A DNA stretch of 64,000 bases, taken from Salpingoeca rosetta (Eukaryota; Protista; Choanoflagellata). The DNA is taken from the NCBI GenBank assembly GCA_033442325.1, contig JAWQFM010000017.1:485905-549904 (forward strand), in the 5' to 3' direction. Shown in pieces: positions 9,431 through 17,633 of this stretch. A model generated the notes under the pieces. That model worked only from the letters and a program-made list of their open reading frames with translations, was not told the DNA's origin and searched no databases. The first letter of the stretch is position 1; each line of letters opens with the position of its first letter. A program made the translations under genes and the position numbers.

Positions 9431-10131
9431 ATGGCTGGGCTTGGTTTCCCTGATGCACAGCAGGCTGCCATGAATAGGCAGATGCCGATGGCTGGCTCCC
9501 TGCTGCGGGAAGCAGAGGAACTGGAGCGCAAGCTGGGCAGCAAAGCACGAAGCAACCAGCGCATGTCGCCCAGAGTGAGTTTGTATGCGGTGTGTGTATG
9601 TGTGAGCGGTGGGGATGTGTGTGTTTGTTGTATGTATGCGGTGTGTGTGTTGTGTGTGTGTATGTGCTGTGTGTGTGTATTGGTTGCTGAGTGCATCGAG
9701 AGGCACGCTTGGAGCTCACATCCACACAACTTTGCCACGATTTTCACGCTTCGCGGTGGATGCTGTGCGTGCAGGACTTCTTCAACGAGCTGCCCGCCAT
9801 CCTGACCAACTTCTTTGGGCTCTCGCAGTCGGACTCCTCCACAAACATGTTCACAAACAAGCGAACCGCAGCTTGTGCGGAGGTGAGCCACTGAGACGAG
9901 TTGCTCGCGTGCGTGTGGTCCCCTGCTCCGTGTGTAATCTCCATTCATCACACGTGTACTCAATGCGCTGACTTGCGCTCGTCGCTTCCTTCCTGCAGCA
10001 CTTGTTCTACCCTGAGGGTCCGATCCTGTCGCACATCGAGCTCATCCAACGAGAGGGAAAGCGATACGGCCTTCCTCTCAAGTTCTTGCCGGTGCGTTCA
10101 CGTGCGTGTGTGTTGCGTGTGTTTCGTGTGT

Positions 10132-10169
<38 letters not shown>

Positions 10170-11716
10170 GCGTGCACATGTGTACATGTGTGTGTGTTTG
10201 CTGCGTGTTGCGTGTGCTCTGCCCGCCGAGGCCCGTTCCTGTCAGTCAATGTGTCGCTTGTGAGAACATTCACCATCTCGTCTTTCACACGTGCAACGCG
10301 GTTTTCTCTTCCCCACAGCTGTTCTTCAGCACGAAACTGGCGATGGAAGCTGTTCCCCACCTGCCGCCCATCGTCCAGGCCATGCTCGCACAACCGGCCA
10401 ACACCGCCAAGCTCGACCACCTCAGCCCACGTGCGTACATGAAGCGTCTGTTGTGTGTGAAGAACTCTGTGTATGTGGATGGATGATTGCGTGAGACTTT
10501 ACTTGCATGTGTTTTCAGCTCAGGTGGCTCGACATTCCCTATTCCCCGCCTTTTCCGTACACACCACCTCATCTCTCCACTCCCCACTCCACGCACCATC
10601 CCCATACCCTCGTTGTCACCTTGCAGGTCCCTTTGCGTACTTCTACATCATGTACTGCATGCGGGCGCTGAAGAGCAGCGAGCGCGAGCGGCTCGAGTCA
10701 TCGCAGAATGTCTACTACCGCCTCCTCGCTGCATTCCTCAACTACTACGTCCCAACCAAGGACAGGTGTGTGTGTGTATGTGTGTATGTGTGTGTGTGTG
10801 AGTGTGTGTATGTGTGTGTATGTGTGTGAGTGTGTGTATGTGTACGTGAGTGCGATTGCTTGCCAATGTGAGCTTACCGCTCCTGATCTGTCACCTCATT
10901 CGTCATTGCGTGTGTGCACACGTGTGCGCCTGTTTGCACTTCAAATCAGCAGCACCAGCGCCACCCAGCCGCCAACAGCCGCATCCGCCGCTCGCAGCGC
11001 AGGGAGCCCGTCCCTCCGAGGTGCTGCTGCTGCTGCTGATGATGATGATGCTGATGGTGATGATGATGCTGATGGTGATGATCATGGCCGCGTGTCCGAG
11101 CACATATCATATCATGACATCACCTTGAGCCAATTTGTTTATGTTATTCTCGACTGGCTCGCTCATTCATCCACCGTGCGACCATCCATCATGTGTACAT
11201 ATGTACAGCCGCTGGGACGGCGGCGCTGCAGAAGATCAACACGGCGACTCACGTCATGACAGAACAGGGTGCGCACGCCAGGGTGGTTGCTGAACAGGGT
11301 GCCTTGCAATGGCGGTGCCTGCGTGGTTGTGAAGAGCAGGGTGCAGTGAAGAGGGGCGTATGTGTGGGCAATGTCAAAGTTCCTCAATTCCGCCAGCGTA
11401 CATCCCATCCCTTTTTGCTTTTCTCACATCGTGCACGCGTGTGTGCACGGCGCGCCACCCTGCTGTGTTGTGTTGTGCAATGGATTGGCAGGGTTCTCTG
11501 GCATCTCGAACATTGATCAGATCTGGCAAGCGTCCGCCCACGTGCGTACAGCGGAGGCAGTGCTGGCAATGTCGTGTGATGTGATGGGATGTGATGGGAT
11601 GTGATGGGATGTGATGTGCAGGATGGTGCGCGTGTGTGGGTGTGGGTGTGGAGGGACAAGATACGCACGTTAACGAACACACACGTACACGCATCCATGT
11701 ACATTCAAACAATCAT

Positions 11717-11804
<88 letters not shown>

Positions 11805-13427
11805 GCACGCACGCACTGACTGCAGGCTGTGCAGCAAGTTGGCGGCCAGTGCACACGTGTTGAGCAGACGCACGCATTCCTGGCGACGGTGCTGGAGATG
11901 TGGCTCGGGCAATATCTCCTCCCAAACCCATCGGTACTGCTGGCGGAGTGCGCTGTTTTGAGGGGCGTATAGGGTGGGGGCATGTGGACGAAGGAAGGGG
12001 TGAGCTTGCAGGTTGGGGAAAGAGAGCGATTTGACGCAGTCGTGCCCTCACATGCACACACACACACACACACACATATATACACACACGCACGCAATCA
12101 CATACACACACAAACACACACACATGCGATCCCACACACACCACCACCGCCCCACGGCGTGATGTCACTGCTAGCGGGCGAGTGTGACGCACGCTGCGTT
12201 GGTTGTGATGGTGGTGCGTTGGCTGCAGCGGTCGCTGTTCTACCACGCGCACGCCGTCGCACATCCAGACCAGCACCCGCCCGAGCACGCCCAGCTCATC
12301 AAGGCCAGATACAGGTGCGCTCGTCGTTGTGGCGGCGATGGTGGTGGTGGTGGTGGGATTGTACTGTTTTGTCAACATCTTGCATGTGCTGGAATAGTTC
12401 CGTGCGTGCGTGCGTGTGTGCGTGTGTGCGTGCGTGTGTTTTCGTGTTCTGTTCCTTTCATCTCAACCCCATCTCATCTCCATTCCACATCACCACCACC
12501 ACCACCACCACCACCAACACCGCCACAACGACATCACAGCGTGATTCGCGGGTTGTACCGCCACTATCTTCCGGCCATCTGTGCGTTTGTGCACACGAAC
12601 CTCCGCCCCCAGCACACCGCATGTCACCAGGTGCGCCAGCCAATCGTCATGGTGATGACAGTGGTGATGATTGATGGTGATGGTGACGTATTGTGGTCAC
12701 GTGTTTGTATGTAGAGAGAAGCTTGTACATGTAGGGGTTTGTCGTGCGTGCGTGTGTGTGTGTGTGCGTGTGTGTGTGCGTGCGTGTGTGTGTGCGTGCG
12801 TGCGTGCGTGCGTGTGTGCGTGCGTGCGTGTGTTCCGCGACGACAGTCATTCGTTTCCATTGAGCGCGCACGCCAACACGACACCACCTGATCCAAACAA
12901 TGATCACTGCAGGCGCTGGACTGCCTGTTGAAGATTCTCTCGCCGTGGAAGTACACATATCCGGACAAGTCGCCCATCACCCGCGAGGCAGCGTACGCGA
13001 CATGCACACTCACAGATGCGTGCGTCTGCTTGAGATATTCTGCCGACACATCCTCTGCCCAACTCAATACTTCCCACCATACACTCACATCCACATTGAC
13101 ACACATACACACACACACACACACATGCACCTCCACACACCACCACGACGACCACCAGAGCTGAGCATGTGCGTGCGCACGTGTCGTTCTTCACGGTGCT
13201 GGCGCTGCAGGCGGTGGAGAACATTGCACACATGGACCTCGGATACGACGAGGCAAAGTCAGTAAACCCATCACAGTCGTGGTGGTGGTGATGTTGGTGA
13301 TGGTGATGGTGATGATGATGGTGATGGTGATGGTGATGGTGAGGGATTGGAAGTTGCTGCGGCTTGTGATTGCACGCGTCTGTGCACCGGTACTTGTTCG
13401 TTGTGAAGTGACACCGCCGCCATGGCT

Positions 13428-13485
<58 letters not shown>

Positions 13486-16400
13486 CAGGTGGCGTCGTGG
13501 AAAGGACGCATCCCTCAACTTGCTCGTCAAATTCCTCAAGTGAGTGATGGAACATACTGCCACCAGATCAGAACACACACACATGCATACACACATTCAC
13601 ACATGCATACATTCACACACACATGCACACATTCACACACACATGCACACATTCACACACACACACACATCCCCATCCATCCTTCCATGCCCCAACTCCC
13701 AACCCACCCCACCCCCTCTCACCTCCATATCACCCATGTGCCCCACCTCCGGCGCCCCTGCAGCGTGTTTCCGACACCAATTGCGCAAGTTACGGTGCAG
13801 TCGCTGATATCCGATGAGGAGGAGGCGTTTGTGACGTCATGGGGCCGCGAACGTGTCGCCACAGCCCTCCACGAACAGGTGATGATGGTGACAGGTCGTG
13901 ATGGTGTTGCTGGATGACTGTGGCCACTGTTCGTTGTTCTACAGGGCGTGCGCGTGCGCTCTTGGCCCTCAGGGATGGCTGCTGTGTCCACTGCTGTCGT
14001 CGATCGGTGTCACAGTGTCACAACCTCACACATTCCCTCCCCCCTTGTTTTGTTCTATTCTCCTCTCCATGGTGAATAGCTCCAAGCGTTTGATCCGCGC
14101 GTGTTGCGGACGTTTGCTCCACTTTTCTTTCGTGACTCAGCACGAACGCCGGCCCAGCTGCAGCAGGCGGCGGCGCGTGCAGACAAGGCCATTGCCGCAT
14201 CATGTACGTTTGTGCGCGTGTGTTGGTTATGTGTGTGTAAATGTGTGTGTGTGCGTGTGTGTGCGCGCGCGTGCATGTGTGTGTGTGTGCACGTGCGTCT
14301 ACAGCAGGACATGGTACAAGTGTTCACGTAGCATCTTTGTCATCATGCGCCGCCCGTGTGTGCACGTGTTTTCGTGTGCTGTGTGCAGATGAAAGCGTGT
14401 CCCGAAACCTGCAACTCGCCAAGGAGCGGGAGCAGCAGCACATCAGCGCAGAAATCACGTGCGTAGAGTTGTGAATTTATGTTTGCGTGCGTGTGTGCGT
14501 GTGTGTGTGTGCGTGTGTGTGCGTGCGTGCGTGTGTGTGTTGTCTTGTCTTGTGCAGTGGATACCCGCATCACCCGCATCATCTTCACCACCCCCACCCA
14601 CCTACTCAACTCTCCTCCCCCCCCCCCCAACACCACATTCCTCTGCAGGCCGCAGCGGCTGCTGCAGGAGCCGATGGCTGTCATCAATGACCTCTTCAAT
14701 CCACGGCCCGCCCTCAACTTCCGCGCACACAGGTGCCGGTGCCGTGCACGTGATGATGTCTTGTCACTCGCAGTTCCACCCTCGTGCATGCGTGTGTGCT
14801 GCATCGCTCTGTACATGCACCTCTCACCTCCTTTATTCTCCCCCATTTGCTTCACCTCGCCCCCTGTCTTCCCCCTCCCCCCCCTCCATCTTTACTCTCC
14901 CCTTCTCTTAACGTCTACCCCCCCGCGCGCCTCTGGTGTGCAGGGCGTATCGAAAGACGCTGGCGTCCATCAAGTCCAGCATCGCCACGCTCTTCCCCGC
15001 AGCCGCCACCGCAGCGGTGAGACACAAGCACCGCCCAAGAGCAGCAGCCCAACACCTGTACACTGATATTGTTGTGGTGTGTGTTTTTCCTTCAACACCT
15101 GCTGCCGTTCCCTCCTTTCAACTGTCCTTTCTTCTGTCTGCTGCCATCACTGCACGCCACCATCCCACCGTCATTCAACCACATCTACTCGTCTTGTCCA
15201 ATCGTATTCTCATCATGGCTTCCACCACACCATCAAACCAATCTTCATTTATTCACGCCTCCATAGGCTGCTGGCGATCGCGCGGCGCTCCTGCGACGAA
15301 CGGCGTCCGGACACGTTGTCCAGCACGTCGATCGCAACGTCATCCGCGCCCGCTGGCTCGCACACTACGCTTCCATGAGGTGCGGGGATGGGGTTGTTGA
15401 GGGGGGGGGGTAAGGTGTTTGGGCTGTGTGTATGTGTGTGTGTATGTGTGTGTGTGTGTGAGCGGTGGAGGTTGGTTGCATTCAAGACGTTTTGAGACAC
15501 AAGTAAACACACACACACATACATACACACACACACACACATACACACACGTAGGCGCCAGCCGGTTCGTTCGTTTGAGATTGGATTCCTCGTCCACATT
15601 CTCAACCGTCTCTCAACGTTCCTCAACGAGAAGGTGATGTAACACTCGAGTTGTAATTCCTGCACATGTGTACGTATGTGTACGTATGTTTTGGGCTGTA
15701 TTCGGTAGACTTCATTTATTCACGCCTCCATAGGCTGCTGGCGATCGCGCGGCGCTCCTGCGACGAACGGCGTCCGGACACGTTGTCCAGCACGTCGATC
15801 GCAACGTCATCCGCGCCCGCTGGCTCGCACACTACGCTTCCATGAGGTGCGGGGATGGGGTTGTTGAGGGGGGGGGGGGTAAGTGTTTGGGCTGTGTGTA
15901 TGTGTGTGTGTATGTGTGTGTGTGTGTGAGCGGTGGAGGTTGGTTGCATTCAAGACGTTTTGAGACACAAGTAAACACACACACACATACATACACACAC
16001 ACACACACATACACACACGTAGGCGCCAGCCGGTTCGTTCGTTTGAGATTGGATTCCTCGTCCACATTCTCAACCGTCTCTCAACGTTCCTCAACGAGAA
16101 GGTGATGTAACACTCGAGTTGTAATTCCTGCACATGTGTACGTATGTGTACGTATGTGTACGTGTGTGAGTGTGATTGTGATTGTGTGCCTGTCTTTCTT
16201 CTTCTTTTTCTCCTCACTGCTCTCGCTGTTCTCACTGTTACCACTGCCCCCACCGTCGCCATCGCCACCGCTGTGTGCCATCCCTGCACCAATCATCACT
16301 CCACCCCCTCGCTCACTCCACATCAGCTTGAGCACCGACCGTGGCTGTATTCGCACCTGGCACCGCATCAGCTTGAAGAGTATGTTGCGCAACACGCCAT

Positions 16401-17633
16401 TCTGGATGACGGGCTGTTTGGGATTTGCCCCGCCCACGAGGTCGACCCCTCCACTCTCTTCCACATCTTCGTCACCCGCGACGGCATGGTGTGTTTTTGT
16501 GGCGCACGTGCAAGTGGCTGGTCGTACATGCGTGCACGCACGCACACGAGGGCTGTGCTGTGTTTGTATTGACACGTGTACTTTGTCCATGCTGACAACA
16601 TGTCTTTTGTTGACTTGTAATTGCGTGCGTGCTCTCTTCCCCTCAAATGCGCTTCACACCAAATATCCACGTCACCAACCACAACCATGCATCCACACCA
16701 CCACTCATCATTCACCACCAACCATGCATCCTTCACATCCATTCCCTTCCACCGTCGCCACCGCCACCCCACAGGTTGAGGCAGACACGTTGACTGCGAC
16801 CGCTGACGGCGGCATCACGCTTGATGGCCATCTCCTGTTTGCAGACGTGGGCGAACTCGTCGCATTCTACAGAGTGAGAACACATCACCTGTGTGCGTGT
16901 GTGTGTGCGTGTGTGTGTGTTTTTGTGTGTAATGCTATGGTTTTCGGCGTGTTGTTCCCCTCCTCCTTGAACTTCTCATATCACCTTCCCCGTTGTTTCT
17001 CAACCACCTCCACGTTTTCGCAGCAATGTCCGTACTACATTGATCGCAGCGGCAAGGAATACGTGCTGAAGCCCATCCCGCACACGCCAGACGAGAACGA
17101 GGTGCCGTGGGCTCATGCCAGCACTTGAGTGACCGTGATTGCATAACCGTATGACTCAATTGTGGGCCTTTGACTTTGTTGTTACTGCTCTTTGGCTTTT
17201 CCTTGCAACAACCAATTGCTCACCACACACACACAACACAACACAACACACACCCTCACTCACACACAACACACACACACACACAACACACACACACATA
17301 ACACACAACACAACACAACACAACACAACACAACACAACACAACACAACACAACACAACACAACACAACACAACACAACACATCACAACACGTGTGCAGC
17401 GTGCACCGACACCGCTTGAAGCAACGCTGCTGTCACTGCGCCGCAAGCTGTTCCCGATCAACTTGCGTCACGCAGCCGATGTGCGCATGTGGGCGTGGCT
17501 GCTGGTGCCCATGCTCGCCTGGTACCTAACGACGTCCGTCAGCATGGCTGCCTTTGTGCTGCTGCTTGTGGTGTTTGCCATGATTGTTGCCGGTGTTGTC
17601 GCCGTCGCTTCCACACCCGCGCCACACGCGTGA
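9431..17633 (+). CDS. SMPD4: Sphingomyelin phosphodiesterase 4 (nSMase3/NET13) homolog with inserted SH2-like domain and C-terminal TM, multi-exon
   Basis: Spliced peptides DFFNELPAILTNFFG, FYPEGPILSHIELIQREGKRYGLPLKFLP, PFAYFYIMYC...VYYRLLAAFLNYYVPT, TVLEMWLGQY, RQPVRSFEIGFLVHILNRLSTFLNEK and INLRHAADVRMWAWLL followed by a hydrophobic tail. These match SMPD4 motifs in order (LDPGGP..FPVSYLP, NPFEYY, FVEMWL, LQPIRSYE, LSLRFLGSYR). Not every internal exon was resolved. Confidence 0.85.
15243..16157 (+). repeat. ~447-nt near-perfect tandem duplication covering two SMPD4 exons
   Basis: 15243-15689 is repeated at 15710-16157 with a 20-nt spacer; visible differences are confined to the G-run and adjacent bases near 15400-15415/15867-15884. 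Confidence 0.97.
16327..17101 (+). other. SH2-like domain encoded by three phase-0 exons within SMPD4
   Basis: Exons 16327-16488, 16775-16873 and 17024-17101 give LEHRPWLYSHLAPHQLEEYVAQHAILDDGLFGICPAHEVDPSTLFHIFVTRDGMVEADTLTATADGGITLDGHLLFADVGELVAFYRQCPYYIDRSGKEYVLKP. This has SH2 hallmarks: PW at betaA, DGxF at betaB, and FxxxxELVxFY at alphaB. Confidence 0.75.

What the first reader, a model, noticed from the sequence alone, without database searches (positions are those of the whole stretch)
16327..17101. SH2-like domain inserted inside SMPD4/nSMase3
Seen: three phase-0 exons encoding an SH2-like fold sit between the SMPD4 motif RQPVRSFE...FLNEK and the final INLRHAADVR+TM exon (17400-17633), all in frame. 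Known: animal SMPD4 is an ER/nuclear-envelope protein with no SH2, and choanoflagellates use SH2 domains in many unusual architectures. The FLVR Arg that binds phosphotyrosine is absent (GLFGICPA). Inference: an undescribed link between SH2-type signalling and nuclear-envelope/sphingolipid biology, probably pTyr-independent. The symmetric phase lets the module be skipped cleanly.
Basis: partly seen in the sequence, partly recalled or inferred. Interest (0 to 1): 0.75.

Follow-up and report, generated by a model that had tools for sequence, protein, structure and literature searches.

The report
Conserved extra module inside choanoflagellate SMPD4
The SMPD4 (neutral sphingomyelinase-3) gene of the choanoflagellate Salpingoeca rosetta really carries three extra in-frame exons just before its membrane anchor; they encode a conserved 113-residue acidic module that looks like an SH2 domain without a phosphotyrosine pocket, but no tool here could confirm that fold.

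Summary
The window is Salpingoeca rosetta. The gene at 9431-17633 (+) is PTSG_06525 (XP_004991909.1, 941 aa), which matches Pfam mit_SMPDase above its cut-off.

A genomic contig of a related, unidentified species (Logan SRR24908159) has the same three exons at the same place in its SMPD4 gene. The exon lengths are identical (162/99/78 nt), protein identity is 56/82/54 %, non-synonymous change is far below synonymous change, and the introns cannot be aligned. So this is a real, selected coding module. An exhaustive HMMER search with exon 1 found it nowhere else.

The SH2 reading is not confirmed. Pfam and PDB sequence searches gave no SH2 hit. Two AlphaFold runs of the full protein had low confidence, and Foldseek returned only helical noise. 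Two things favour SH2: the secondary-structure order helix, four strands, helix, two short strands (low confidence), and my reading of the motif pattern. The positions I align with the phosphotyrosine-binding residues hold Pro, Cys and Ala/Glu, and the module's net charge is -13. If it is an SH2 fold, it is blind to phosphotyrosine. Interest is moderate.

The parts
9431..17633 (+). Whole coding span of the S. rosetta SMPD4/nSMase3 orthologue PTSG_06525 (XP_004991909.1, UniProt F2UG24, 941 aa in the public model)
   Evidence: Exon 1 of the insert hit P0001 at 100 % identity. tblastn of P0001 maps every exon onto the window. Pfam mit_SMPDase E=2e-13, 49.6 bits against a cut-off of 23.7.
16023..16101 (+). 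SMPD4 exon (second tandem copy) encoding RQPVRSFEIGFLVHILNRLSTFLNEK. It is the last family-conserved block before the insert and ends in phase 0.
   Evidence: Pfam mit_SMPDase profile positions 697-721 of 818, E=0.007. The L001 counterpart gives E=0.0012.
16327..16488 (+). Insert exon 1, 54 codons, aa 752-805. On the SH2 reading it would hold helix A and strands B-C, and it contains GLFGICPA.
   Evidence: Translation. GT-AG and phase 0. 56 % identical to L001:1208-1369, which has the same length. pN 0.26 against pS 0.72.
16775..16873 (+). Insert exon 2, 33 codons, aa 806-838. It is the best conserved part (DGGITLDG, FADVGELVAFY).
   Evidence: Translation. 82 % identical to L001:1733-1831, same length. 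pN 0.13 against pS 0.56. It is the only part of the insert to reach pLDDT 72-74 in the second model.
17024..17101 (+). Insert exon 3, 26 codons, aa 839-864 (CPYY...L.PI, with an acidic tail)
   Evidence: Translation. 54 % identical to L001:2116-2193, same length. GT-AG and phase 0.
17400..17633 (+). Last exon, aa 865-941 plus stop: juxtamembrane helix, INLRHAADVR, and the hydrophobic C-terminal anchor
   Evidence: Translation. It holds the only strongly hydrophobic segment of the protein, aa 902-940. About 44 % identical to L001:2369-2605.
15243..16177 (+). Two tandem copies (467-468 nt, 99-100 % identical) of a block holding two SMPD4 exons. They give an exact 64-aa repeat in the public model, directly upstream of the insert.
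   Evidence: the repeat finder. aa 624-687 equal aa 688-751. L001 has a single copy.

Best explanation
The three exons are a genuine coding cassette kept by selection. They add a compact, acidic alpha/beta module of 113 residues to the cytosolic linker of the SMPD4 orthologue. The module lies between the last family-conserved helix (RQPVRSFE...FLNEK) and the juxtamembrane helix plus C-terminal membrane anchor.

The module is most likely a strongly diverged SH2-type fold that has lost its phosphotyrosine pocket. In my alignment Pro replaces Arg alphaA2, Cys replaces Arg betaB5, and Ala/Glu replaces His betaD4, and Pro and Cys are conserved in both species. It would therefore act as a phosphotyrosine-independent docking or self-association surface held about 30-40 residues from the ER/nuclear-envelope membrane. 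Given its net charge of -13, its partner is probably basic.

It appears to have entered the SMPD4 linker as a symmetric phase-0 exon set in a narrow choanoflagellate lineage.

Shown: the exons are real, in frame, conserved under purifying selection, at a conserved position in two species, absent from detectable relatives elsewhere, and in an SMPD4 host.

Inferred: the SH2 fold, the loss of the pocket, the docking function and exon shuffling as the origin.

Sub-confidences: real coding module 0.9; SH2-type fold about 0.6; phosphotyrosine-independent if SH2 0.85.
For: - The public model joins the exons to SMPD4.
- A second species has the same three exons, with the same lengths, phases and position.
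- Protein identity is 56/82/54 %, pN is far below pS, and the introns cannot be aligned.
- The host is SMPD4, and the motif before the insert maps to Pfam positions 697-721 of 818, so the family consensus has no room for a 113-aa domain there.
- Mammalian SMPD4 is described as a C-tail-anchored protein (Krut et al. 2006, cited in PMC10393401). Here the only hydrophobic anchor is aa 902-940, which puts the insert on the cytosolic or nucleoplasmic side.
- The first AlphaFold model gives the insert the element order helix 765-774, strands 782-786, 794-800, 806-813 and 819-827, helix 830-837, strands 842-844 and 850-852. That is the SH2 order from helix A to strand G.
- The second model raises aa 811-840 to pLDDT 72-74 with three strands and a helix.
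- From my own knowledge of the SH2 consensus, which is a lead and not a test: W-x-Y, ..., DG-x-F-x-[IV]-x-x-[AS], ..., GG-x-x-[IL]-x(5)-F-x-x-[LV]-x-E-L-V-x-[FY]-Y keeps the spacing seen in Src-type SH2 domains.
- G-[IV]-C-P-A is invariant in both species, and the module's net charge is -13.
Against: - No SH2 family matched in Pfam, on the exons or on the whole protein, at E up to 10. HMMER's filters drop most matches above E about 0.1, so this only excludes a clear match.
- There was no SH2 chain in phmmer or hmmsearch against PDB.
- Both AlphaFold models are low-confidence. The insert scores pLDDT 45-48 in the first. In the second, aa 781-807 show no strands or helices and aa 771-810 score pLDDT 29-39.
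- Foldseek on both models found no SH2 among the top hits.
- Only two sequences of the module exist, so there is no covariation.
- No RNA evidence for the junctions was reachable.
- An acidic surface and the loss of every phosphate-binding residue mean that nothing functional ties it to SH2 biology.
Confidence: 0.55

Rival explanations
1. The cassette encodes a lineage-specific globular module of some other alpha/beta fold, or a new one. On this reading the SH2 resemblance is a coincidence of hydrophobic patterning.
For: Every objective fold or family test was negative or uninformative. An exhaustive HMMER search of 1.84 billion representatives with exon 1 found only the S. rosetta protein, the L001 ORF and one repeat protein that I take as spurious. 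None of the residues that define SH2 function is present, and the module is acidic.
Against: The element order in the first AlphaFold model matches SH2 from helix A to strand G. The C-terminal half (GG...F..V.ELVAFY) has the spacing typical of SH2 strand E to helix B by my own recollection. Choanoflagellates are rich in SH2 domains (PMC3507883), which makes an SH2 donor plausible.
Confidence: 0.33
2. The three exons are an alternative cassette. Because every boundary is phase 0, the main mRNA may skip some or all of them (16101>17400), and the module-bearing isoform could be minor or stage-specific.
For: All junctions are phase 0, so any combination keeps the frame.
Against: The exons are as well conserved as the flanking constitutive SMPD4 exons, or better: 56-82 % against 44-77 %. 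Their lengths are unchanged between species. The public model includes them. This reading is compatible with the best explanation, because it concerns regulation and not identity.
Confidence: 0.15
3. The exons are an annotation artefact: open frames inside a long last intron that are never translated.
For: The public model around them is imperfect. It includes an exact 64-aa repeat that comes from a 467-nt tandem duplication.
Against: Conservation is confined to the exons, pN is far below pS, the lengths are identical and the splice sites canonical in a second species whose introns have diverged beyond alignment.
Confidence: 0.03

Closest known systems
SH2 domain (Pfam PF00017 and the SH2-like clan), especially SH2 folds that do not use phosphotyrosine, such as the C-terminal SH2 of Spt6
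   Same: The size is about 100 aa. The element order is helix, central strands, helix, final strand(s) in the low-confidence model. By my reading, the hydrophobic signature W..., DG.F.[IV], GG....F..[LV].ELV.[FY]Y is present. SH2 folds that bind without phosphotyrosine are known, for example the Spt6 tandem SH2 and secondary-site binding by PLCgamma1 and p85 (PMC3507883).
   Different: No profile or structure search recovers SH2. In my alignment the arginines at alphaA2 and betaB5 and the histidine at betaD4 are replaced by Pro, Cys and Ala/Glu. The module has net charge -13. It lies in a tail-anchored lipid enzyme rather than a signalling adaptor or kinase.
SMPD4 / neutral sphingomyelinase-3 (Pfam PF14724, mit_SMPDase)
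   Same: The whole protein passes the Pfam cut-off. The conserved motif before the insert maps to profile positions 697-721. It has a C-terminal hydrophobic anchor like the C-tail-anchored mammalian enzyme.
   Different: 190 residues follow the motif, where the family profile has about 97 positions. The extra 113 aa form a conserved folded-looking module. The S. rosetta model also has a 64-aa exact repeat upstream.
Domain gain by shuffling of symmetric (phase 0-0) exons, as described for animal modular proteins
   Same: All three exons and both flanking boundaries are phase 0. The module sits in a poorly conserved linker.
   Different: No donor gene was found, because there is no detectable paralogue anywhere. 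The shuffling origin is therefore an inference only.

Membership tests
SH2 domain | Match to an SH2 family profile (Pfam PF00017 or related) at or above the curated cut-off | tested here: not met
   No SH2 family was listed for the three exons or for P0001 at E up to 10. Weak matches above E about 0.1 are mostly filtered, so only a clear match is excluded.
SH2 domain | Three-dimensional similarity to solved SH2 structures: a central antiparallel sheet flanked by helices A and B | tested here: inconclusive
AlphaFold could only be run on the whole 941-aa protein. Foldseek against PDB returned only helical-repeat noise. A domain-only model could not be made, because no reference exists for the joined 113 aa.
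SH2 domain | Secondary-structure order: helix A, strands B, C, D (E, F), helix B, strand G | tested here: inconclusive
The second model keeps only the C-terminal half.
SH2 domain | Arginine betaB5 of the FLVR motif, with Arg alphaA2 and His betaD4, forming the phosphotyrosine pocket | tested here: not met
   Both species have G-L-F-G-[IV]-C-P-A. Pro is invariant at the alphaA2-equivalent position, and Ala/Glu stand where betaD4 would be. The residue equivalences rest on my manual alignment to the SH2 consensus.
SH2 domain | Binding of phosphotyrosine peptides | not testable with these tools
   This needs recombinant protein and peptide arrays. The sequence argues against it (net charge -13).
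SMPD4 / nSMase3 (PF14724) | Whole-protein match to mit_SMPDase above the gathering score | tested here: met
   49.6 bits against a cut-off of 23.7, E=2e-13, three matched stretches. The exon at 16024-16101 matches profile positions 697-721.
SMPD4 / nSMase3 (PF14724) | C-terminal membrane anchor (tail-anchored topology) | tested here: met
   The only Kyte-Doolittle window above 1.6 is aa 902-940, at the extreme C-terminus. Tail anchoring of the mammalian enzyme is taken from Krut et al. 2006, as cited in PMC10393401.
SMPD4 / nSMase3 (PF14724) | Neutral sphingomyelinase activity and ER/nuclear-envelope localisation | not testable with these tools
   This needs an enzymatic assay and imaging in S. 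rosetta.

The most novel reading that the evidence does not exclude
A phosphotyrosine-blind, SH2-derived module was shuffled as three phase-0 exons into the juxtamembrane linker of SMPD4 in one choanoflagellate lineage. It has been kept there by selection and gives an ER/nuclear-envelope lipid enzyme a new, lineage-specific docking surface. This would be an SH2 fold in a tail-anchored sphingolipid enzyme, an architecture I found described nowhere.
Probability: 0.5. Interest if true: 0.5.

Novelty: new variant of a known kind. Interest (0 to 1): 0.4.

Why it matters
SMPD4 is a poorly understood enzyme of the ER and nuclear envelope. Its loss causes human microcephaly through defects in nuclear-envelope dynamics (PMC10393401). 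S. rosetta is the genetically tractable sister-group model for animal origins.

A conserved, lineage-specific folded module sitting right next to the SMPD4 membrane anchor offers a way to find SMPD4 partners, and the cassette can be deleted cleanly because every boundary is phase 0. If the fold is SH2, it would add an example of choanoflagellates re-using the SH2 scaffold outside phosphotyrosine signalling. If it is not, it is an orphan domain seen in only two sequences. Either way this is a modest, local result and does not change how SMPD4 or SH2 domains are understood.

Tried and rejected
1. Exon-by-exon Pfam and PDB sequence searches gave nothing for the insert. In one search my fifth query was in the wrong frame. 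It was repeated correctly.
2. Pfam and phmmer against PDB on the whole public protein found only mit_SMPDase and chance hits to ribosomal protein L26.
3. The word-index protein search returned only self hits. I ran it on the insert region of P0001, on the whole of P0001 and on P0002. The whole-protein search was swamped by 8000 candidates that yielded no hit but the protein itself, so I retrieved no SMPD4 orthologues and could not align linkers across species.
4. Two metagenome scans, with the exon 2 and exon 1 alignments, found no relatives.
5. AlphaFold on P0001 alone gave mean pLDDT 40. With the L001 exon pieces as extra rows it gave mean pLDDT 48. Foldseek against PDB on both was uninformative.
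6. MAFFT scattered the short L001 fragments in several alignments (A4, A5, A8). Only A7 was clean and was used.
7. A profile of A7 against PDB gave nothing.
8. A regex scan of the six-frame translation of the window found no canonical SH2 exon that could serve as a local reference.
9. Paper searches found nothing for SMPD4 with SH2 or choanoflagellates, for PTSG_06525, for SRR24908159, or for SMPD4 with Salpingoeca. The one supplement look-up found no files held.
10. The P0003 hit is a repeat protein with 7 stretches at 25 % identity. I rejected it as spurious.
11. The bacterial promoter and terminator scan is irrelevant for a eukaryotic intron region.
Full report
**What is there.** The window is from Salpingoeca rosetta, scaffold GL832972.1.

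The finding lies in the 3' part of a many-exon gene on the + strand, 9431-17633.
- 16327-16488 gives 54 aa and includes GLFGICPA.
- 16775-16873 gives 33 aa. My first try was one base off.
- 17024-17101 gives 26 aa.

Each exon is preceded by AG and followed by GT, and each begins and ends on a codon boundary. The exon before them ends ...FLNEK at 16101. The exon after them (17400-17633) encodes ...INLRHAADVR followed by the only strongly hydrophobic segment of the protein and the stop codon.

**Independent gene model.** I searched the exons one at a time, by reference, and did not join them myself. An exhaustive HMMER search of 1.84 billion cluster representatives with exon 1 returned three proteins.

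The first, P0001, is 941 aa and 100 % identical to exon 1 over residues 752-805. It is the NCBI/UniProt model PTSG_06525 (XP_004991909.1, F2UG24), named only 'hypothetical protein'. tblastn maps it back exon by exon onto the window.

From then on, the only joined sequence I used was this database protein, by its id. A domain-only sequence (aa 752-864) has no reference, so domain-only folding and HHpred-type comparison were left out.

**The host is SMPD4.** P0001 matches Pfam mit_SMPDase (PF14724) at 49.6 bits against a cut-off of 23.7. The 26-aa exon RQPVRSFE...FLNEK alone matches profile positions 697-721 of 818. So does its counterpart in the second species.

Only about 97 profile positions therefore follow this motif in the family consensus, and they include the membrane anchor. 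P0001 has 190 residues there. That is tool-based support for calling the 113 aa an insertion in the linker.

My recollection of the human protein agrees, with a linker of roughly 50 residues and no domain. This is from memory only, because the word-index search returned no SMPD4 orthologues to align.

**A second species.** The second hit, P0002, is a 96-aa ORF from a 2.8-kb Logan contig (SRR24908159; L001). The contig is genomic and holds the 3' end of an SMPD4 gene of a related but clearly different organism.

It has the RQPVRSYEVGFLVHLLNRLSTLLNDQ exon, then three exons homologous to the insert, then the anchor exon, in the same order. The insert exons have exactly the same lengths as in S. 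rosetta (162, 99 and 78 nt), canonical splice sites and phase 0 throughout.

| Measure | Exon 1 | Exon 2 | Exon 3 |
|---|---|---|---|
| Protein identity | 56 % | 82 % | 54 % |
| Non-synonymous differences per site (pN) | 0.26 | 0.13 | 0.29 |
| Synonymous differences per site (pS) | 0.72 | 0.56 | 0.79 |

Intron lengths differ (225/286/150/298 nt against 229/363/284/175 nt). Apart from GT/CA microsatellites, only exons align at the DNA level. The insert is at least as conserved as the flanking SMPD4 exons, which show about 44-77 % identity.

This is the signature of a translated, selected module, and it all but excludes an annotation artefact.

**Distribution.** Outside these two sequences I found nothing:
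- In the exhaustive search, the third hit is a repeat protein with seven weak stretches, which I take as spurious.
- Three word-index searches returned only self hits.
- Two metagenome scans found no relatives.

A 54-aa query cannot see very distant relatives. Still, any clearly homologous segment in the annotated proteomes in that library should have appeared. Whether Monosiga brevicollis or animals are among them was not checked. The module looks restricted to a narrow choanoflagellate lineage.

**Is it an SH2 domain?** No tool says so:
- Pfam lists no SH2-type family for the exons or for P0001 at E up to 10. HMMER's filters remove most matches weaker than E about 0.1, so only a clear match is excluded.
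- phmmer and two-sequence profiles against all PDB chains give no SH2 hit.
- AlphaFold could only be run on the full 941-aa protein. Without an alignment the mean pLDDT is 40, and 45-48 in the insert. With the L001 exon pieces added as rows (alignment A7, checked) the mean rises to 48. Residues 811-840 reach 72-74, but residues 781-807 show no strands or helices and aa 771-810 score pLDDT 29-39.
- Foldseek against PDB with either model returns only helical-repeat proteins at E above 0.01. That reflects the poorly modelled helical body of SMPD4 and says nothing about the insert.

What speaks for SH2 is weaker evidence.

By my own knowledge of the SH2 consensus, which is a lead and not a test, the sequence keeps these features:
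- the leading Trp;
- an amphipathic helix A;
- DG-x-F-x-[IV] of strand B;
- two further alternating strands;
- the run GG-x-x-[IL]-(5)-F-x-x-[LV]-x-E-L-V-x-[FY]-Y, which matches the spacing from strand E to helix B of Src-type domains.

Nearly all of these positions are invariant between the two species. I put the SH2 fold at about 0.6.

**If it is SH2, it does not bind phosphotyrosine.** In that alignment Arg alphaA2 is Pro and Arg betaB5 is Cys, both conserved in the two species. His betaD4 is Ala/Glu. The module has 19 acidic against 6 basic residues, a net charge of -13. That also argues against the anionic-lipid binding reported for some SH2 domains, and for a basic protein partner.

**Likely mechanism.** Mammalian SMPD4 is a C-tail-anchored protein of the ER and nuclear envelope (Krut et al. 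2006, cited in PMC10393401; abstract of PMC10393401). Here too the only anchor is at the extreme C-terminus.

The module therefore faces the cytosol or nucleoplasm with the rest of the enzyme. A predicted helix links it to the membrane, about 30-40 residues away.

The best-supported reading is a phosphorylation-independent docking or self-association module that positions or regulates SMPD4 at the membrane. It was probably gained as a set of symmetric exons. The function and the origin are inferences. No donor gene was found.

**What remains open.** The open points are inclusion of the exons in mRNA, and whether they are ever skipped. All boundaries are phase 0, so skipping would be silent to the frame. 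The true fold, the taxonomic spread among choanoflagellates and the identity of the SRR24908159 organism are also unresolved. I found no paper that mentions this architecture or this gene.

**Verdict.** The SH2 label is plausible but unproven. The signalling interpretation is too strong.

It is a new variant of a known protein family and is of moderate interest.

Noticed in passing
window 15243-15709 and 15710-16177: A near-perfect tandem duplication (467-468 nt, 99-100 % identical) repeats two SMPD4 exons, 15267-15379 plus 15555-15633 and again 15734-15846 plus 16023-16101. Together they make 192 nt, or 64 codons, so the frame is kept. The NCBI model carries aa 624-687 and 688-751 as identical copies. 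The related contig L001 has a single copy. It is either an assembly artefact or a very recent duplication.
   Followed up: partly
window 16874-17023: The 150-nt intron between insert exons 2 and 3 has no stop codon in frame. It is part of a 340-codon open frame, 16106-17125. Retaining it would add 50 residues without breaking the frame. The corresponding L001 intron is 284 nt, so this is probably chance.
   Followed up: partly
L001:205-360 against window 14650-14721 and 14942-15016: The related species has one exon where S. rosetta has two, so an intron was gained or lost between them. The exon structure of the insert is unchanged.
   Followed up: no
window 12631-12687: The public model reads VRQPIVMVMTVVMIDGDGD through a (GTGATG)n-like repeat. 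That stretch lies just after an in-frame CAG|gtgcgc site, which could be the real splice donor. The donor may be mis-set in the annotation, adding about 19 residues.
   Followed up: no
window 17200-17390, and many other introns of the gene: The introns are packed with CA/GT dinucleotide repeats and an (ACAAC)n pentanucleotide microsatellite. The L001 relative also has GT/CA dinucleotide tracts, and they produce the only non-exonic BLAST matches between the two loci.
   Followed up: no
L002 (window plus flanks; S. rosetta GL832972.1:485335-513537): The neighbours of the SMPD4 gene are an upstream minus-strand NTP_transferase/hexapeptide-repeat gene, an LRR gene with a faint Roc hit beyond it, and three downstream genes with no Pfam hit on record.
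   Followed up: no
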